NCBI RefSeq assembly: GCF_032444005.1
Contig: NC_091283.1
Location: 45,756,001-45,820,000 of the forward strand
Length of the DNA stretch: 64,000 bases
DNA from: Ranitomeya imitator
Taxonomy: Eukaryota
Reading direction: 5' to 3'
Part shown: piece after piece, positions 3,732-34,613 of the stretch
Layout: the number at the start of each line of letters is the position of its first letter
How positions within the stretch are numbered: position 1 is the first letter of the stretch
Position numbers and translations under genes: made by a program
The notes under the pieces: model-generated
The model's database searches: none
Told to the model about the DNA's origin: nothing
The model's input: only the letters and a program-made list of their open reading frames with translations

Positions 3732-4946
3732 ATGCAGTGCTCAGCCATGGTGAGATGCCGGAAGTTCAGCATATCGATCATCGCCCTTCTTGCTCTTGTT
3801 GTCATCAAAATTTTCATTGACTTGAGTTCCCCTCCTTTTGAATTCTCTGACCCATCATCATCTATTTCTGCAGAACCTTCCAACAGCGCACTGATAATGT
3901 TGGAGTCCTTACAAGATGACGAGAAAGCAACCTTGGCAGCTCTTCATTCCTTGGCACAGAACTTGAAAAAAATGGTACCCTTTGCTGAGGCCTACTGGAA
4001 TATGAAGCAACTTCAGCTCCTGGACTTACGGAGGCCATGGGCATGGACATGCAGTAGGTCCATGGCATGGATATCACCACAGGAGCCGTATTCAGACCTA
4101 TTAAAGACTTTCCTCACACAGGGTAATTGTCGAAACCATAAAATGATAATTAACCAGCCATACAAATGTCCACTCAATAGTACTTTTCTTCTTCTGGCCA
4201 TCAAGTCTTCACCACAGAACTTTGCACAGAGACAGGCCGTAAGGGAAACCTGGGGGGCCGAGAAGAGCTATGATGGGAAGTACGTCAGACTGGTCTTCCT
4301 CTTGGGCACAGTGCCAGTGCTTGACCTGTCACCTCTCTTGGAATACGAAAACAACCTCTCTCATGATCTTCTTCAGTGGGACTTTGAAGACACCTTCTTC
4401 AACTTGACATTGAAGGACCAGTTGTTTTTGGGGTGGGCGAGGACATATTGTACAAAAGCAAAATACATACTTAAAGGTGATGATGATGTTTTTGTCCGGA
4501 CGGCCAGCATAATGCGCGTTCTTTCATCACTTAGCAGATATAGGCATCACTCACTCTATATGGGACATGTTGTAAAATCCGCCAAACCTTACAGAGACCC
4601 TCAAAGTAAATACTACATACCTACTTCTTACTATATGGGGATGTATCCACCCTACGCTGGCGGAGGAGGGTATGTGTTTTCCGGATCTCTCACCCCATGG
4701 CTTTACTTGGCGTCCCATTTTGTGTTCCCATTTCCAATCGATGATGTCTACACTGGAATGTGTTTTATGGTTTTGGGGGTGAAACCAATTGGGCATCCAG
4801 GATTTAAGACATTTAATACGCCAAAGAAATCAAAATCCTCAAACTGCGTGGACAAAAAATTCCTTTTAGTACATCAGAAAAGCCCCCAAGAGATTTTGAA
4901 GATGTGGGGGGATGATTTTAAAGGAACACTGATTCAACCTTGCTGA
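3732..4946 (+). CDS. B3GNT8: Beta-1,3-N-acetylglucosaminyltransferase 8 (GT31 family), single coding exon
   Basis: 404-aa ORF with an N-terminal TM anchor and GT31 motifs LLLAIKS, RQAVRETWG, WDFEDTFFNLTLK, KGDDDVFV, YPPYAGGGGY, FPIDDVYTGMC. AYWN and TLKD..LGW resemble human B3GNT8, and the position next to BCKDHA matches human synteny. Splice acceptor at 3728/3729. ATG 3747 (gccATGg, MVRCRK) may be the real start. Confidence 0.9.
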   Translation: MQCSAMVRCRKFSISIIALLALVVIKIFIDLSSPPFEFSDPSSSISAEPSNSALIMLESLQDDEKATLAALHSLAQNLKKMVPFAEAYWNMKQLQLLDLRRPWAWTCSRSMAWISPQEPYSDLLKTFLTQGNCRNHKMIINQPYKCPLNSTFLLLAIKSSPQNFAQRQAVRETWGAEKSYDGKYVRLVFLLGTVPVLDLSPLLEYENNLSHDLLQWDFEDTFFNLTLKDQLFLGWARTYCTKAKYILKGDDDVFVRTASIMRVLSSLSRYRHHSLYMGHVVKSAKPYRDPQSKYYIPTSYYMGMYPPYAGGGGYVFSGSLTPWLYLASHFVFPFPIDDVYTGMCFMVLGVKPIGHPGFKTFNTPKKSKSSNCVDKKFLLVHQKSPQEILKMWGDDFKGTLIQPC

Positions 4947-9534: not shown

Positions 9535-9705
9535 TTACTTTTCAAAGCTGTCCAAGGGGTAATGTTCCCCATAAACCTTTAGGTGTTTTTTCAAAGAATC
9601 CTCCTGTTTCTTCAGACGCGGCGGCTTTTCCGAGTAGACGTCTGTGAACATGTGATCGATACTGGGCTTCCGTTTTCGCTCGGCCTCTTCGAAAGCTTCC
9701 ATGAC
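9535..9705 (-). CDS. BCKDHA: BCKDHA exon 9 (last coding exon)
   Basis: ctgcag|[56 protein letters not shown]; 171 nt. Confidence 0.97.
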
Positions 9706-10537
9706 CTGCAGAAAAAAACGGTTGTGTTACATATACTCATTGCCAGGAGCCCAGAGAGACCCTCTTAGGGTATGTTTCCAAAATCCACTGCGGATTACAA
9801 TGCTGAGTGTTGAGGGTGAGATTTTACGCAAAGAAAATCCAGCTCTCAATTTATGTTGCAGATTTTCACACTAGATTTTACCCTGTAATGTGTAAGGAGA
9901 CTTATAGGCCATGCAATGCCCCTCTGCAAAATTAAATACGCAAATTCAGACAGGAAGAGGATTTGAACTCTAGCGCCAACTACTGGAAGCAGCCATCCTA
10001 AAAGTCAGTATTGACCCTGTAATGAGCCTTGCCACATGACTTGGGATAAAAGCCAAACCAGACTCCATTCTCAGACACATGATTCTGGGTGTATTACAGG
10101 CTCTAAAGCAGAGGTTAAAATTTGTGGCATTTCCACAGCCAAATCGCCCACTTTTGGACTTGCTGTGGATTTTCCGATGCATGTGGACAAACCTGACTGT
10201 GCAGGGCCATGCAGCACAGCTGTGCGCTGCGGTTTCTTGCTCAGTGGGATGGTCGCTATGCAAGCAGAAAATGACAGGGAGGCAGCTGTGGTCTTCTCGC
10301 TCTCCCGGTGGTTGCTCTCCGGGTGGTCCCAAAGTGTTAACTTATACTAGCCATATACCATCACCCCCCCACCTTAAAACGGGATCATTGTACACACAGA
10401 TAAGCACCATCACAGCAATGGGGGAATTGTTCTGGGACCCACAAACCCGTGGACTTGGTCATCACCATCTCTACGTGTTGGTAAACTGCAGAGAAAGAGC
10501 CATGTGCAGTAAAGAAACGGCTCAGAACCAGACTCAC

Positions 10538-22615: not shown

Positions 22616-22700
22616 ATGGAGATGCTCGCGGGCTTGCGGGAGATCGCCTGTGAGCAGAGCCCCCTGAGCAGGCCGGATGGCTCCGCTACGTTCCTGCAGG
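22616..22700 (+). CDS. EXOSC5: EXOSC5 (Rrp46) exon 1
   Basis: MEMLAGLREIACEQSPLSRPDGSATFLQG|gtaata; SRPDGSA RNase-PH motif; phase-1 donor. Confidence 0.93.
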
Positions 22701-23337: not shown

Positions 23338-24678
23338 ATGGGGAAAGCAAAAGAATTGTCAACGGATCTACAGGAAAAGGTAGTTGAACTGAATAAAACA
23401 GGAAAGGGATGCAAAAAGATATCCAAGGAATTGATAATGGCAGTCAGCAGCGTTCAGACTGTGATTAACAAATGGAACATCAGGGCCCCGGTAAAAACAA
23501 AACCACGGTCAGGTAGACCAACAACAATCTCATCCACAACTGCCAGGAAAATTGTTCGGGATGCAAAGAAAAACCCACAAATAACATCAGCTGAAATACA
23601 CGACTCTCTGAAAACTAGCGGTGTGGCTGTTTCAAGATGCACAATAAAGAGGCACTTGAAGAAAAATGGGCTGCTTGGTCGAGGCGCCAGAAGAAAGACA
23701 TTACTGCGCAAATGCCACAAAGTATCTCACCTACAATATGCAAAACAACAGAGACATGCCTCAAAACTTCTGGAACAAGGTAATTTGGAGTGATGAGACC
23801 AAAATTGAACTTTTTGTCCACAACCATAAACGTTACATTTGGGGAGAGGTCAACAAGGCCTATGATGAAAGGAACACCATTCCTACTGTAAAGCATGGAG
23901 GTGGATCGCTGATGTTTTGGAGATGTGTTAACTACAAAGGCACAGGAAACATGTTCAGAGTTGGAGGAAAGATAAATGCAGCACGTTATCAGCAAATAAT
24001 GGAGGCAAATTTGCACTCATCAGCCCGGAACCTGCGCATGGGACGTACTTGGACTTTCCAACATGACAACGATCCAAAACACAAGGCCAAGTCAACCTGT
24101 CATTGGCTACAGCAGAACAAAGTGAAGGTTCTGGAGTGGCCACCTCAGTCTCCTGACCTTAAAGGGACACTGTCACCTGAATTTGGAGGGAACAATCTTT
24201 AGCCATGGAGGCGGGGTTTTTGGGTGTTTGATTCACCCTTTCCTTGCATGCTGGCTGCAATATTGGATTGAAGTTCATTCTCTGTCCTCCGTAGTACATG
24301 CCTGCACAAGCAATCTTGCCTTGCGCAGGCATGTACTATAGAGGACAGAGAATGAACTTCAATCCAATATTACAGCCAGCATGCAGCCAGCGGGTAAGGA
24401 AAGGGTGAATCAAACACCCAAAAACCCCACCCCTATGGCTGAAGATTCTTCCCTCCAAATTCAGGTGACAGTGTCCCTTTAATATCATTGAGACACTCTG
24501 GGGAGATCTCAAGCGCGCAGTTCATGCTAGACAGCCCAGGAATCTACAGGAACTGGAGGCTTTTTGCCAAGAAGAGTGGGAAGCTTCACCATCTGAGAAA
24601 ATAAAGAACCTCGTCCACAATTACCACAAAAGACTTCAAGCTCTCATTGATGTTAGAGGGGACAATACACGGTATTAA
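23338..24678 (+). pseudogene. Tc1 DD34E transposase, frameshifted and interrupted
   Basis: MGKAKELSTDLQEKVV...WSDETK...FQHDNDPKH...SPDL[MITE]NIIETLW. Frameshift near 23745; MITE inserted just before the catalytic Glu. Confidence 0.9.
24163..24478. mobile_element. T2/Kolobok-type palindromic MITE
   Basis: TTAA|AGGGACACTGTCACCTGAATTTGGAGGG...CCCTCCAAATTCAGGTGACAGTGTCCCT|TTAA. Confidence 0.9.
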
Positions 24679-24967
24679 GAAAGGGGGTACGTGAACTTTA
24701 GATCGGGGACATTTGGATGTTTTGGGTTGTTATTATGATTTAGAAAGAGCATTATCCAAGAAGTATCGTTTCTCCTTGCAGAGATTGACATGCTAAGCAT
24801 GCCGAGATGAGGAGATTTAAAGCTGCAATGCTCCTCTGGGTAATATGCTAATTATGCAAATTGTCTCTTCAGAGAGGAAGAGAGCGAGAACTCTAGTGCT
24901 ACCTATTGGAAGGTAGCAATCCTACAAGTCAATGTTGACCCTTAGACGAGCCTTTTCACATGACTAA

Positions 24968-25431
24968 GGCTACTTTCACACTAGCGTCGTACGACGCACG
25001 ACGCAATGCTGTGAAAGCGCAGCACAACGGGGGCAGCGGATGCATTATTACAACGCATCCGCTGCCCCATTGTGAGCTCCGGGGAGGAGGGGGCGGAGTT
25101 CCGGCCGCGCTTGCGCGGTCGGAAATGGCGGACACAATGCACCAAAAAACGTTACATGCAACTTTTTTGGTGCCGACTGTCCACCACAACATGACGCAAC
25201 GCGTCGCTAATACAAGCCTATGGAGAAAAAACGCATCCTGCAGACAACTTTGCAGGATGCGTTTTTTCTGCAAAACGACGCATTGCGACGTGCGTCGTAC
25301 GACGCTAGTGTGAAAGTAGACTTGGGCGTTGAAATACTGCATCCGCTGCCCACCTCATGCACAAATTTCACAACGTATGTCGGCCCGACGCATAGCGACG
25401 GACCCGTACCGGCACAAGTGTGAAAGTAGCC
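24968..25431. mobile_element. PIF/Harbinger-type MITE
   Basis: TIR GGCTACTTTCACACT...AGTGTGAAAGTAGCC with TAA/TTA flanks; interrupts the minus monomer. Confidence 0.8.
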
Positions 25432-25444
25432 TTAGGATAATAGC

Positions 25445-25524
25445 GAAACCAGAATCTCAATTTGCAGACACTGTGTGTTTCTGGGTACTGCCCCTCGTCA
25501 GTGCAAAGCGGAGATCTGGTTTGG
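25445..25524 (-). ncRNA. Type I hammerhead ribozyme (variant copy)
   Basis: Minus strand: TTTGCA-CTGACGA-GGGG-cagta-CCCA-GAAA-CACACAGTGT-C-TGCAAA. Core intact; G10.1/A11.1 mismatch in stem II. Confidence 0.75.
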
Positions 25525-25679
25525 CTGATTGAGAGGCGTCTGACCCTTATCCAAGTAGTATCATTTTTCCTTGTAGGATTGCTATCTTCCAATTGGTGGC
25601 ACTAGAGTTCTAGCTCTCTTCCTCTGAAGAGACAATTTGCATAATTAGCATATTACCCAGAGGAGCATTGCGGCTTTAA

Positions 25680-26392
25680 AGGTACCGTCACACTAGACGA
25701 TATCGCTAGCGATCCGTGATGTTGCAGCGTCCTCGCTAGCGATATCGTCCAGTGTGACAGGCAGCAGCGATCAGGCCCCTGCTGTGCTGTCGCTGGTCGG
25801 GGAAGAAAGTCCAGAACTTTATTTGGTCGCTGGACTCCCCGTAGACATCGCTGAATCGGCGTGTGTGACACCGATGCAGCGATGTCTTCGCTGGTAACCA
25901 GGGTAAACATCGGGTTACTAAGCGCAGGGCCGCGCTTAGTAACCCAATGTTTACCCTGGTTACCATTGTTAAAGTAAAAAAACAACCGCTACATACTTAC
26001 CTACCGCTGTCTGTCCTTGGCGCTCTGCTTCTCTGCTCTGGCTGTGAGCACAGCGGCCGGAAAGCAGAGCGGTGACGTCACCGCTCTGCTTTCCGGCTGG
26101 CCGGCGCTCACAGCCAGATCAGAGAAGCACAGCGCCGGAGGACAGACAGCGGTAGGTAAGTATGTAGCGGTTGTTTTTTTACTTTTAGGATGGTAACCAG
26201 GGTAAACATCGGGTTACTAAGCGCGGCCCTGCGCTTAGTAATCCGATGTTTACCCTGGTTACCGGGAACCTCGGGATCGTTGGTCGCTGGAGAGCGGTCT
26301 GTGTGACAGCTCTCCAGCGACCAAACAGCGACGCTGCAGCGATCCGGATCGTTGTCGGTATCGCTGCAGCGTCGCTTAGTGTGACGGTACCT
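25680..26392. mobile_element. PIF/Harbinger-type MITE
   Basis: TAA|AGGTACCGTCACACT...AGTGTGACGGTACCT|TAA with internal palindromes; interrupts the plus monomer. Confidence 0.85.
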
Positions 26393-26478
26393 TAAGTCTC
26401 CTCATCTCGACATGCTTATCATGTCACTCTCCGCAAGGAGAAACGATACTTCTTGGATAACAGTCAGACGCCTCTCAA

Positions 26479-26557
26479 CCAAACCAGATCTCCACTTTGC
26501 ACTGACGAGGGGCAGTACCCCGAAACACAGTGTCTGCAAATTGAGATTCTGGTTTGG
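26479..26557 (+). ncRNA. Type I hammerhead ribozyme
   Basis: Stem I TTTGCA/TGCAAA (extended by CCAAACCAGA/TCTGGTTTGG), CTGACGA at 26502-26508, stem II GGGG-cagta-CCCC, GAAA at 26522-26525, palindromic stem III ACAC-A-GTGT. GUC cleavage after 26534. Confidence 0.9.
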
Positions 26558-27706
26558 CTATTATCCTAAGTCATGTGACAAGGCTCATTAAAGGGTTGAC
26601 ATTGACTTGTAGGATTGCTACCTTCCAATAGGTGGCACTAGAGTTCTAGTTCTCTTCCTCTTTGAAGAGACAATTTGCATAATTAGAAAGAAACCACAGT
26701 AGTTTGACAATAAATGGCTTCACAAGAAATAAACCAAAAAACAATTGAAACGGAGCATATAACTGTTTGTCAACCAGAAAGAACCAAGAAGAAATGCCCC
26801 TAAAATATAACTTTTATTCTATTAGGTAAAAATGACCTAAAAATGGTCAGGAGACAGAAGTTAATCTTAACAATATAACTTAACACTAAAAAGCATAGAG
26901 GTATATAAAGTGAGGGGGTGCTCTTTCCCTTCCTCACCCTACCTTACCGCGGAGGTTGGCACCCTAAATTCGACATGGCGCCCCCACTCGACGACGGCTC
27001 TCCCTTAAGACCCTAAGGGGGACTAACAAAGAAACACCATCGCCAACACCAGTATAATTAAAGTGCTAATGTGCTTTAAAAGTGCTAAATAAACACCTGC
27101 ATAGGTATATACCAATATTTTGATATACCAGTTTTTCCCTTTCGCCACGACAGCACCCCACTGGAGAGAGGGATCCGCCCCGCAGGAACAGGAAACCTAC
27201 CGAGAAATAAAAGGGGGCGGTCCGCCTCTCCTCCTCAGTTTAGGTTTCCTGTTCCTGCGGGAACAATCCAGGAACGACAGGACTACAGGACATACCTGGG
27301 CTAGCATGCCGCCTGCGCGGTATCCTTGAGAACGGCAGGGGCTGCAGCTCAGAAGCAGCGTCGGGGGAGTTACGTTAGACGGCTCCCTCCTCAGCTGGTG
27401 GATGGAGCAGACGGCCGGGTCCGGGGAGGGCCGCCCGGCGTCTTCTCCGGCGTGCGGTGCGGCAAGGAGCCGGGTAAGAGAATCTCCATTGCGGTCCGGT
27501 GCTGAATCCCGGACCGCGCATGCGCCGACCGCCGCAATACTGGCTACCCCGGAACTGAAGGAGTCACTTCCGGGGCGCCTAGGCCGGATCTGGGGCGGGG
27601 GAGCCAGCGGCAACCCGCGCATGCGCATTGCGCAGCGGGGAAAAAAAAAAAAAAAAGAGGAAAAAGGGCGCACTATTTAAAAACGCCCAGAAACAATAAT
27701 GCGGCG

Positions 27707-32175: not shown

Positions 32176-32897
32176 CTCTTATATCCCTCCCTATATTAAT
32201 ATAGTACTTACTATTGAGTAAAATTCTTTTAATCATATATGAGCAAATAAGTTTGAAAATGAAATAAATTATATTTGCCTAATACTGGCGGTCCTCCGGG
32301 TACTCTGAAATCAAAACTGAGGAGGAGAGGCGGACCGCCCCCTTTTATTTCTCGGTAGGTTTCCTGTTCCTGCGGGGCGGATCCCTCTCTCCAGTGGGCT
32401 GCTGTCGTGGACTCACTAAAAGAGTATTACCGGTGAGTAATCCGGCTTTTTTCTTTTTTTCAGGATTCCTTTTAGTATGAATCCTGATGCCTTTTTAACT
32501 AAGGTGCAGCTGTGAGCAGAGATATATGGAATAGTATTTTAGCAATAGGCTTACTAATTGTGCCGTATCTTAAATCATTACATATCACCTCATAGTAGAG
32601 ATGCAAAAGAATTCAAGCAGTGAGGAGTAGCATTCCCAAAGAGGTGTATTAATGGAGTATATCAACAACACATCTCAGACCTCTCACTATAGCCAATAGA
32701 CATAAGACACACTGCTCCTGGTCAAATCAATAGTCAAATTGCCAGGTGTCATCAGTCACAGAGTGTCCATTAAAAACATTCACATTTGCTGAATAAATCA
32801 TTCCTTAGTTATATGCCATATTTAGAAAAAAATGCAGGGATATAATTGATCCATAATCAGACCGTGGTCATAGAAAAAAAATTAGTACAGGTAGTAC

Positions 32898-33426
32898 AGC
32901 GATGTCTTCACTGGTAACCAGGGTAAACATCGGGTTACTAAGAGCAGGGCCGCGCTTAGTAACCCGATGTTTACCCTGGTTACCATTGTAAATGTAAAAA
33001 AAAAAAAAAAAAACACATACTTACATTCCGGTGTCTGTCGCGTCCCCCGGCGTCAGCTTCCCTGCACTGTCAGCGCCGGCCAGCTGTAAAGTAGAGCACA
33101 GCGGTGACGTCACCGCTCTGCTTTACGACCGGCACTGACACAGTGCAGGGAAGCTGACGCCGGGGGACGCGACAGACACCGGAATGTAAGTATGTAGTGT
33201 TTTTTTTTTTTTTACATTTACAATGGTAACCAGGGTAAACATCGGGTTACTAAGCGCGACCCTGCGCTTAGTAACCCGATGTTTACCCTGGTTACCAGGG
33301 GACTTCGGCATCGTTGGTCGCTGGAGAGCTGTCTGTGTGACAGCTCTCCAGCGACCAAACAGCGACGCTGCAGCGATCGGCATCGTTGTCTATATCGCTG
33401 CAGCGTCGCTTAATGTGATGGTACCT
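32898..33426. mobile_element. 5'-truncated copy of the 25680-26392 Harbinger-type MITE
   Basis: Shares the GGTAACCAGGGTAAACATCGGGTTACTAAG palindromes and right end GTGATGGTACCT|TAA. Confidence 0.8.
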
Positions 33427-34613
33427 TAAGTCCCCCTTAGGGTCTTAAGGGAGAGCCGTCGTCGAGTGGGGGCGCCATGTCGAATTTAGGGTGCCAACCT
33501 CCGCGGTAAGGTAGGGTGAGGAAGGGAAAGAGCACCCCATCACTTTATATACCTCTATCCTTTTTAGTGTTAAGTTATGTTGTTAAGAGTAACTTCTGTC
33601 TCCTGACCCTTTTTAGGTCATTTTTACCTAATAGAATAAAAGTTATATTTTAGGGGCATTTCTTCTTGGTTCTTTCTGGTTGACAAATAAATGGCTTCAC
33701 CCAATCACTAACCAAGAGTGGAGAAAAAGTTTTGGTGTTGTTATTCATAGTCTCTGAAAAAAGGCCAAGAAAGAAAAAATTCTGCCGGGGTGTGTAAACT
33801 TTTGAGCACAACTGTAGATGGAGCAGGGAGCAATGGATTTTGTTTTTGAAGCCCCACGATCATCAACCACCAATGTAACGGAGCCACCAAAAAGTGCAGG
33901 ATGGTGCTGTCTACCACAGCCTGCTCTGGAAGGAGAAGGGTCTGCAATAACCCATTCCTCGTCCCTGTGTGCCACATAGACACAGCGAGGGGCAGGGATC
34001 GGTAGCGCCCCCGTGCTGAAGCTGTGGGAACCACTAGTCGTGCTCCTGGCATCCACCTGGGCAGCCACCATAGGGAAAGCCGGAGCCCAGCCGAGGCGGC
34101 TCCGTTCCCAGAAGAGGAGATCTTGGGGTGCGCAGGAAGGAAGCGGATCCTGGCGGCCACATAACAAGAAGAAATCACTATTAACCGTTGACTGTCCGAT
34201 CCCCTCGCCGGAAAACTAAAAAGAATTGCCCCAACCTAGCCAGAGGAGCCATAGTACGGGTCTGTGCTCAAGAAGAGGAAACATTAAGGTGCAGCGCAAT
34301 GTGCCATGAATCTCGTGTGGTTCTGCACCTAGTGAGTCCAGGCCCCCCGGGGTCACAGCTCCTGGGGCACTTCACACCTCCAGCCTTCACTTACCTGACC
34401 CCATGGCTTTGATCCTCGGGGGCAGGGCCTCCCACTGTATGACTATATAAGCCACCCAGCGTCCACCCTGATGACCCCGCTTCCAGGGTGCACGATGGAC
34501 CCTTATACCAGGGCAGCCCCGGCCACAGCTGCCTTTATGAAGGGTACTAGGGATCTTGGCCTACAGGGCGAGCAGTGACCTGCAGATGTCATACTGCATG
34601 AGGGAGCATGAAA

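What the first reader, a model, noticed from the sequence alone, without database searches (positions are those of the whole stretch)
24749..26686. Hammerhead-ribozyme retrozyme-like repeat (~325-nt monomer)
Seen: a non-coding unit of 320-328 nt with a complete type I hammerhead (CUGACGA, GAAA, GUC cleavage triplet, short palindromic stem III). It is arranged head-to-tail within each arm and is circularly permuted between arms. Established: minimal type I hammerheads occur in Penelope-like elements, in newt satellite 2 (~330 nt) and in metazoan non-LTR retrozymes that yield circular RNAs. Inference: this is an anuran retrozyme family that spreads through self-cleaved, circularised RNA using a borrowed RT. 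Limit: each strand here has only one ribozyme, so this locus alone would not release a unit-length monomer.
Basis: partly seen in the sequence, partly recalled or inferred. Interest (0 to 1): 0.85.

Follow-up and report, generated by a model that had tools for sequence, protein, structure and literature searches.

The report
Dead fold-back hammerhead retrozyme insertion
This is a real but old and broken copy of a known kind of small mobile element (a hammerhead-ribozyme "retrozyme"), pasted as two inverted arms into a Tc1 transposon; it is an ordinary member of its class whose shape preserves how it was inserted.

Summary
Window 24750-26686 contains a non-coding ~322-nt unit, present as two inverted arms of 1.1 and 1.25 units. 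The arms meet head-to-head at a 4-nt microhomology (25570-25573). Each arm was later split by a Harbinger-type MITE, and the two MITEs make up 61% of the interval. The + arm carries a complete type I hammerhead (26496-26540, cut after 26534). It is the only hit of a strict descriptor in 64 kb (0.005 expected) and matches Rfam Hammerhead_1 full length, though below gathering. The - arm ribozyme is damaged.

Contigs from two species show many Tc1 paralogs without the block. The block is flanked by an 8-10-bp target duplication (TTAGAAAG occurs only twice in the window). It is therefore one insertion event.

The geometry fits cDNA priming from both 3' ends of a staggered break, as shown in vitro for a Penelope-like element protein. 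Both arms read through the cleavage site and exceed one unit, so the template was multimeric or circular RNA, not a cleaved monomer.

Self-cleavage, circular RNA and the donor reverse transcriptase were not tested. Non-LTR retrozymes are already described in frogs. This scan has already found such arrays, and one fold-back copy, elsewhere in this genome. Verdict: a new member of a known kind, of low to moderate interest.

The parts
24740..24749 (.). Left copy of the target-site duplication, TTAGAAAG(AG), in the 3' untranslated part of a Tc1 transposon
   Evidence: TTAGAAAG occurs only twice in the window, at 24740-24747 and 26683-26690. Paralogous Tc1 contigs join 24747 to 26689 and carry a single copy.
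24750..24967 (-). Minus arm, outer (3') part: unit positions about 181-323 followed by 1-70. Its outer end lies at 24750-24752.
   Evidence: Inverted repeats I2, I4, I6 and I7; alignment to the plus-arm unit, 93.4% over 349 columns.
24968..25431 (.). Later insertion: Harbinger-type MITE with 14-bp terminal inverted repeats (GGCTACTTTCACAC) and a TWA duplication (TAA 24965-24967, TTA 25432-25434)
   Evidence: Read from the sequence. The unit is continuous once it is removed. The family is absent from organism E contigs.
25435..25573 (-). Minus arm, inner (5') part: unit positions 39-181, including the damaged hammerhead at 25461-25507 (C11.1 to A; two extra bases in stem III)
   Evidence: Inverted repeats I8-I10; pattern match; fails the strict descriptor and Rfam.
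25570..25573 (.). Head-to-head joint of the two arms, with CTTG shared by both (4-nt microhomology)
   Evidence: Homology of the minus arm ends at 25573 and that of the plus arm starts at 25570.
25570..25679 (+). Plus arm, inner (5') part: unit positions 211-323
   Evidence: Direct repeat D2 with 26606-26661; BLAST 93.8% to 26606-26686.
25680..26392 (.). Later insertion: second Harbinger-type MITE (terminal repeat AGGTACCGTCACAC, TAA duplication 25677-25679 and 26393-26395), itself a nested palindromic structure
   Evidence: Sequence; related copy at 32897-33429; family absent from organism E contigs.
26396..26686 (+). Plus arm, outer (3') part: unit positions 1-291
26496..26540 (+). Complete type I hammerhead ribozyme motif, predicted cleavage between 26534 and 26535. 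Extended stem I reaches 26487-26548.
   Evidence: Strict descriptor: single hit against 0.005 expected. Rfam RF00163 full-length alignment, 25.5 bits, E 1.1e-4 in a 101-nt search, below gathering 34.
26683..26691 (.). Right copy of the target-site duplication. TTAG may equally be the last four bases of the unit (microhomology).
9895..10090 (-). Older, degenerate solo fragment of the same family (unit positions 122-330, about 80% identity, hammerhead core decayed)
   Evidence: BLAST; alignments.

Best explanation
A dead, decayed copy of a non-LTR (metazoan-type) hammerhead retrozyme: a ~322-nt non-coding unit that carries a type I hammerhead.

Inferred history:
1. A Penelope-like-element RT/endonuclease made a staggered double-strand cut in the 3' part of a Tc1 transposon. 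That Tc1 lies in intron 1 of the EXOSC5 gene.
2. Both 3' overhangs primed cDNA synthesis on retrozyme RNA, with 2-4 nt of microhomology at each end.
3. Each cDNA ran for more than one unit (1.1 and 1.25 units), straight through the ribozyme cleavage site.
4. The two cDNA ends were joined at a 4-nt microhomology.

This gives two inverted arms flanked by an 8-10-bp target duplication. The template was therefore a multimeric or circular RNA, not a cleaved monomer.

Afterwards two MITEs landed, one in each arm. The arms drifted to 93% identity and the minus-arm ribozyme was damaged.

The locus itself has one hammerhead per strand and cannot release a unit-length RNA.

Shown: the anatomy, the hammerhead motif, the single-event insertion with a target duplication, and the multi-copy family.
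Inferred: the RNA intermediate, the PLE enzyme, and the nature of the template.
For: - Unit and arm map.
- Hammerhead.
- Empty site: joint 24747 to 26689 in 14 contigs of X1, 9 of X38 and 2 of X9. In addition, 56-84 loose ends per DNA run at 24749 and 26689 continue as the opposite flank.
- Target duplication: TTAGAAAG is present only at the two borders.
- The arms abut with no target sequence between them.
- Within-arm duplicate 93.8% and between-arm 93.4% are alike. Three-way differences are star-like: 3, 1 and 2 singletons over 81 columns. This is consistent with one template sequence and one event.
- No ORF of 130 aa or more lies in the interval, the longest being 128 aa inside the palindromic MITEs. 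Ten of the window's 30 ORFs of at least 180 aa were scanned against Pfam and none matched a reverse transcriptase or GIY-YIG domain.
- The unit folds more stably than shuffles as a circle, z = -4.2, with GC 44%. This matches the low-GC, highly self-paired retrozyme RNAs of PMC7229834.
- Literature: non-LTR retrozymes are ~170-400-nt type I hammerhead repeats with TSDs longer than 4 bp (PMC7229834). They are present in all seven amphibians sampled, with 57 Xenopus families related to PLE pLTRs (bioRxiv 10.64898/2026.07.22.740005). PLE insertions typically carry an adjacent inverted 5'-truncated copy (PMC8557442). A purified PLE protein cleaves and extends both DNA strands (PMC11167929).
Against: - No direct evidence for an RNA intermediate, self-cleavage or circles. 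The runs that hold the unit are only guessed to be RNA, and they hold the neighbouring Tc1 and MITEs as well.
- Rfam gathering is not reached.
- The monomeric active fold is predicted 3.9 kcal/mol above the minimum free energy structure.
- Eight of nine Xenopus retrozyme dimers did not cleave in vitro (bioRxiv 10.64898/2026.07.22.740005).
- The two outer ends lie at different unit positions (about 70 and 291). The in vitro PLE work found a fixed internal RT start site (PMC11167929).
- The right copy of the duplication differs from the consensus empty site by 2 nt in a purine run, so the exact TSD length is uncertain.
- No tandem array of this family was actually seen here.
Confidence: 0.7

Rival explanations
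1. The unit is not an independent retrozyme. It is the pseudo-LTR of an autonomous Penelope-like element, and this locus is an extremely 5'-truncated PLE insertion (pLTR-only, with the usual inverted partner).
For: The inverted, 5'-truncated arrangement is the PLE hallmark (PMC8557442). Frog retrozyme families are sister to PLE pLTRs (bioRxiv 10.64898/2026.07.22.740005). Other notes of the scan describe pLTR-only fold-backs in this genome (unchecked).
Against: In both arms the sequence wraps from the end of the unit straight into its start, with no ORF or other sequence in between. That is what a closed tandem or circular unit gives, not a pLTR followed by an ORF. No RT or GIY-YIG domain was found in the ten window ORFs scanned against Pfam. 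The distinction is partly semantic if retrozymes derive from pLTRs.
Confidence: 0.17
2. A DNA-level event rather than retrotransposition. Either a piece of hammerhead satellite DNA (or extrachromosomal fold-back DNA) was captured at a double-strand break by microhomology-mediated end joining, or a replication template switch inverted part of a small array.
For: There are microhomologies at the central joint (CTTG) and possibly at both outer ends. Short duplications can arise from fill-in of staggered breaks.
Against: An 8-10-bp duplication with 3'-overhang geometry, and both arms oriented with their 3' ends outward, is what two-strand target-primed reverse transcription predicts. It also recurs in other fold-back hammerhead insertions noted in this genome (unchecked). 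Simple snap-back is excluded, because the arms start at different unit positions (39 and 211) and the minus arm runs past the point where the plus arm meets the target.
Confidence: 0.1
3. The hammerhead is a chance motif in an ordinary interspersed repeat with no ribozyme biology.
For: It is below Rfam gathering. The minimum free energy structure of the isolated region is not the active fold.
Against: All core positions and three helices are present. There is a single hit against 0.005 expected. The motif is retained, apart from one core change, in the second arm. Unit size and GC match described amphibian retrozymes (PMC7229834).
Confidence: 0.03

Closest known systems
Metazoan non-LTR retrozymes (Cervera and de la Pena 2020, PMC7229834; vertebrate survey by Li, Clavereau and Pollet 2026, bioRxiv 10.64898/2026.07.22.740005)
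   Same: Non-coding unit of ~322 nt (amphibian mean 316 bp), GC 44%, one type I hammerhead per unit, weak stem III, TSD longer than 4 bp, head-to-tail continuity of the unit, multi-copy family.
   Different: This copy is not a tandem array. It is a fold-back of two inverted arms of 1.1-1.25 units with one hammerhead each, so it fails the 'active retrozyme' criterion of at least two consecutive units with intact hammerheads. Expression and circles were not shown.
Newt satellite 2 and axolotl Rtz331/Rtz353 repeats (PMC7229834)
   Same: Unit of ~330 nt, type I hammerhead with a short palindromic helix III expected to work better as a dimer.
   Different: Helix III here can form 3 bp with a triloop (or 4+4 bp with an A.A mismatch as a dimer), rather than 1 bp with a palindromic tetraloop.
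Penelope-like element insertions with pLTRs and an inverted 5'-truncated partner (PMC8557442); two-strand cleavage and extension by the Anolis PAc protein (PMC11167929)
   Same: Inverted 5'-truncated copies abut head-to-head, 3' ends face the target on both sides, a hammerhead lies in the repeated part, the target is A/T- and purine-rich, and priming occurs on both strands.
   Different: No RT/GIY-YIG ORF. The outer ends lie at two different unit positions instead of one fixed RT start. No 30-40-bp tail was recognised.
L1 twin priming inversions
   Same: The second 3' overhang primes on the same RNA, giving an inverted 5' segment joined by microhomology and flanked by a TSD.
   Different: Here the two arms overlap in content and each exceeds one unit. 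That needs a repeated or circular template.

Membership tests
Type I hammerhead ribozyme (Rfam RF00163) | Conserved core CUGANGA ... GAAA ... UH, with helices I, II and III, and helix I open | tested here: met
   Plus arm 26496-26540: all core bases present; helix I 6 bp (plus 6 bp beyond an internal loop), helix II 4 bp, helix III 3-4 bp, C17. The minus-arm copy has C11.1 changed to A.
Type I hammerhead ribozyme (Rfam RF00163) | Score at or above the curated gathering threshold (34 bits) | tested here: not met
   25.5 bits, E 1.1e-4 in a 101-nt search. No hit in the window-wide or 2.2-kb scans. The model alignment is full length; the shortfall comes from helix I and II letters, not the core.
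Type I hammerhead ribozyme (Rfam RF00163) | Self-cleavage after H17 | not testable with these tools
   Needs in vitro transcription of monomer and dimer. Only contigs were available, so there is no read-end evidence (table 6 empty).
Non-LTR retrozyme | Short (~170-400 nt) non-coding, low-GC repeat unit with a type I hammerhead | tested here: met
   322-323 nt, GC 44%. No ORF of 130 aa or more in the interval; the longest, 128 aa, lie inside the MITEs.
Non-LTR retrozyme | Tandem arrangement with a hammerhead in each of at least two consecutive units | tested here: not met
   At this locus each arm has 1.1-1.25 units and one hammerhead. TRF finds no array. Whether the family forms arrays elsewhere could not be tested. 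Head-to-tail wrap within each arm shows that the template was repeated or circular.
Non-LTR retrozyme | Insertion flanked by a target-site duplication longer than 4 bp | tested here: met
   TTAGAAAG(AG) at both borders, with a single copy in paralogous empty sites.
Non-LTR retrozyme | Expressed as linear and circular unit-length RNA | tested here: inconclusive
   Runs guessed to be RNA hold near-identical unit contigs, but also the neighbouring Tc1 and MITEs. No raw reads were available.
Penelope-like element (autonomous) | ORF with a telomerase-like RT and a GIY-YIG endonuclease between pLTRs | tested here: not met
   No ORF between or beside the arms. Pfam scan of ten of the window's 30 ORFs of at least 180 aa found no RT or GIY-YIG.
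Penelope-like element (insertion signature) | Partial tandem plus an adjacent inverted 5'-truncated copy | tested here: met
   Two head-to-head 5'-truncated arms, each with partial tandem overlap. Signature as described in PMC8557442.

The most novel reading that the evidence does not exclude
The fold-back is an in vivo footprint of Penelope-type reverse transcription primed from both strands of one staggered break on a circular retrozyme RNA (rolling-circle reverse transcription). Both cDNAs exceed unit length and cross the ribozyme's ligated cleavage site. If copies like this are common, they would give the first genomic evidence that circles, not multimers, are the retrotransposition template.
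Probability: 0.3. Interest if true: 0.5.

Novelty: new member of a known kind. Interest (0 to 1): 0.3.

Why it matters
By itself it matters little. Hammerhead retrozymes and their link to Penelope-like elements are already described in amphibians, including frogs, and this copy is dead.

Its value is as a clean, datable example. It has an empty paralogous site, a target duplication, microhomology joints and two arms longer than one unit. This shows the two-strand priming that so far has only been demonstrated in vitro for a Penelope-like element protein. It also constrains the template to a multimer or a circle.

A genome-wide census of such fold-backs could test whether circular RNAs are the substrate of retrozyme mobilisation.

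Tried and rejected
- Rfam at gathering over the whole window and at E up to 10 over 2.2 kb gave no hammerhead. The hits were only miRNA-like matches to the palindromic MITEs, which I regard as artefacts of hairpin repeats. The hammerhead appeared only when 101 nt were searched.
- The minus-arm ribozyme gave no Rfam hit.
- Scanning metagenome contigs for the 25-nt core plus stem II returned one high-GC bacterial contig unrelated to this family.
- The search of earlier findings by sequence was blank.
- The double-hammerhead (dimer) energy could not be evaluated, because the structure is a pseudoknot in concatenated notation.
- The cofold minimum free energy structure was not the double hammerhead.
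- RNA evidence: no run is on record as RNA and all runs are contigs. There is therefore no information on molecule ends, strand or circles.
- Simple snap-back synthesis as the origin of the inversion was rejected: the arm starts differ (unit positions 39 and 211), and the minus arm continues past the plus arm's target junction.
- Two independent insertions were rejected: there is no target sequence between the arms and a single TSD around both.
- In-window Tc1 copies at 60.9-63.4 kb belong to other families and gave no empty site.
Full report
**What is there**

Reading the sequence, the repeat finder and BLAST of the pieces against the window show that 24750-26686 is built from one non-coding unit of 322-323 nt. 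It is arranged as two inverted arms.

- In element orientation, the minus arm is 24750-24967 plus 25435-25573. It spans 355 nt, from unit position 39 through the unit end and on to position 70.
- The plus arm is 25570-25679 plus 26396-26686. It spans 402 nt, from position 211 through the unit end and on to position 291.

Each arm is therefore longer than one unit and wraps head-to-tail.

The arms meet head-to-head at 25570-25573, where CTTG is shared by both. They are 93.4% identical over 349 aligned columns.

**Later insertions**

- A 464-bp MITE (24968-25431) has 14-bp terminal inverted repeats and a TAA/TTA duplication. It splits the minus arm.
- A 713-bp MITE (25680-26392) has a TAA duplication and is nested and palindromic. 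It splits the plus arm.

Removing them restores an uninterrupted unit. The many miRNA-like Rfam matches at relaxed threshold all fall in these palindromes. I regard them as artefacts.

**The ribozyme**

The plus arm carries a complete type I hammerhead:
- helix I: 26496-26501 pairs with 26535-26540, then an internal loop, then 26487-26492 pairs with 26543-26548
- CUGACGA: 26502-26508
- helix II: GGGG/CCCC with loop CAGUA
- GAAA: 26522-26525
- helix III: ACACAGUGU
- C17 at 26534

A strict structural descriptor finds only this site on either strand of the 64-kb window, against a mean of 0.005 in 200 shuffles.

Rfam Hammerhead_1 aligns over its whole length at 25.5 bits (E 1.1e-4) when 101 nt are searched. 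This is below the gathering score of 34, and the match was filtered out in the larger scans.

Helix III is short. It forms 3 bp with a triloop as a monomer, or 4+4 bp around an A.A mismatch between two copies. The monomeric active fold is predicted at -14.5 kcal/mol against a minimum free energy of -18.4 kcal/mol, because CACUG pairs with CAGUG. That fits the dimer-dependent amphibian hammerheads described in PMC7229834.

The minus-arm copy (25461-25507) has C11.1 changed to A and two extra bases in helix III. It fails both tests.

As a circle, the unit folds at -96.8 kcal/mol, z = -4.2 against dinucleotide shuffles, with GC 44%.

**One insertion event, with a target duplication**

The left flank is the 3' part of a Tc1 transposon. 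The transposase ends near 24676. The Tc1 terminal repeat is at about 33790-33815, beyond a DIRS element.

Laying contigs of four public runs on 24400-26950 gave a joint from 24747 to 26689. It was seen in 14 contigs of a DNA run of organism A, 9 of organism E and 2 of a third run, with several near variants. In addition, 56-84 loose ends per DNA run at 24749 and at 26689 read on into the opposite flank.

Paralogous Tc1 copies therefore lack the whole block and read TTAGAAAGAGAAAC with a single copy of the motif. In the window, TTAGAAAG occurs exactly twice, at 24740-24747 and 26683-26690. This is a target-site duplication of 8-10 bp. Its exact length is blurred in two ways:
- a 2-nt difference in a purine run
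- TTAG is also the last four bases of the plus arm, and GA possibly the last two of the minus arm

There is no target sequence between the arms, so both arms belong to one event.

**How it most likely arose**

Both arms have their 3' ends at the target and their 5' ends in the middle. The duplicated target corresponds to 3' overhangs on both sides.

That is the geometry of cDNA synthesis primed from both strands of a staggered break, followed by joining of the two cDNA ends at a microhomology.

A purified Penelope-like element protein cleaves and extends both strands in vitro, unlike R2 and L1 (PMC11167929). An inverted 5'-truncated copy next to a partial tandem is the classical PLE insertion structure (PMC8557442).

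Simple snap-back is excluded. The arms start at different unit positions, and the minus arm continues through the position where the plus arm meets the target.

Both arms cross the cleavage site and exceed one unit. The template was therefore an uncleaved multimer or a religated circle, not a self-cleaved linear monomer. These data cannot tell the two apart.

The within-arm duplicate (93.8%) and the between-arm identity (93.4%) are alike. Differences among the three copies of positions 211-291 are star-like. Both observations are consistent with one template sequence at one time. These last steps are inference.

**Family and relatives**

- A second, older fragment of the family lies at 9895-10090 on the minus strand (about 80% identity, unit positions 122-330, hammerhead decayed).
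- Runs of at least four coded organisms hold 24-68% of the unit's sampled words.
- In the DNA runs of organisms A and E, unit contigs are abundant. The two MITE families are absent from E.
- No ORF of 130 aa or more lies in the interval, the longest being 128 aa inside the palindromic MITEs. Ten of the window's 30 ORFs of at least 180 aa were scanned against Pfam and none encodes an RT or GIY-YIG domain.
- I could not compare the unit with Penelope pLTRs of this genome, nor see whether the family forms tandem arrays elsewhere.

**Comparison with what is known**

Non-LTR retrozymes are defined as ~170-400-nt low-GC tandem repeats with a type I hammerhead, TSDs longer than 4 bp and abundant circular RNAs (PMC7229834).

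A 2026 survey found them in all seven amphibians sampled, with a mean unit of 316 bp and 57 families in Xenopus. It showed that they are sister to PLE pLTRs. Only one of nine Xenopus dimers cleaved in vitro (bioRxiv 10.64898/2026.07.22.740005).

This locus meets the unit, ribozyme-motif and TSD criteria. It does not meet the 'two consecutive intact units' criterion, so it is a dead derivative of such a family.

Earlier notes of this scan report retrozyme arrays of 352-384 nt, and one fold-back copy with a 13-bp duplication, elsewhere in the same genome. I did not check those. They agree with the present reading and show that the class has been found before on other DNA of this genome.

**Verdict**

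This is a new member of a known kind, of low to moderate interest.

Noticed in passing
window 26704-26724 and 33681-33701 (DIRS element between; ITRs 26766-27024 and 33429-33687): The DIRS retrotransposon to the right of the finding is flanked by a 13-20-bp direct duplication of the Tc1 target. TAAATGGCTTCAC occurs only twice in the window. Tc1 paralog contigs run straight from 26723 into the sequence that resumes at 33701. As far as I know, tyrosine-recombinase elements are not expected to make target duplications. This could be an att-like shared core or a different integration route.
   Followed up: partly
window 22616-22700 (+), 9540-9715 (-), 3732-4946 (+): Host gene context. EXOSC5 exon 1 and the BCKDHA last exon are recognised by eye from the translation. 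A B3GNT8-like galactosyltransferase ORF is supported by Pfam Galactosyl_T, E 6.6e-40. The Tc1, the fold-back and the DIRS therefore sit in EXOSC5 intron 1, with the intact hammerhead in the sense orientation of the gene.
   Followed up: partly
window 9895-10090 (-): Degenerate solo fragment of the same hammerhead unit, just upstream of the BCKDHA last exon and in sense orientation. Its 5' limit lies 18 nt upstream of the position equivalent to the cleavage site.
   Followed up: partly
window 24154-24487: Another palindromic MITE (106-nt arms, 91% complementary) is inserted in the Tc1 transposase region. Paralog contigs of organisms E, A and B skip it (loose ends at 24481).
   Followed up: no
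L001:36-75 (metagenome contig Ga0075423_10225895): A high-GC bacterial contig carries the identical 25-nt CUGACGA-GGGGCAGUACCCC-GAAAC string. It may be a bacterial hammerhead with the same helix II, or a coincidence. It is unrelated to the frog repeat.
   Followed up: no
window 24400-26950, runs X1 versus X38: The Tc1 family and the hammerhead unit are abundant in both coded organisms A and E. The two Harbinger-type MITE families have essentially no depth in E, so they are younger or lineage-restricted.
   Followed up: no
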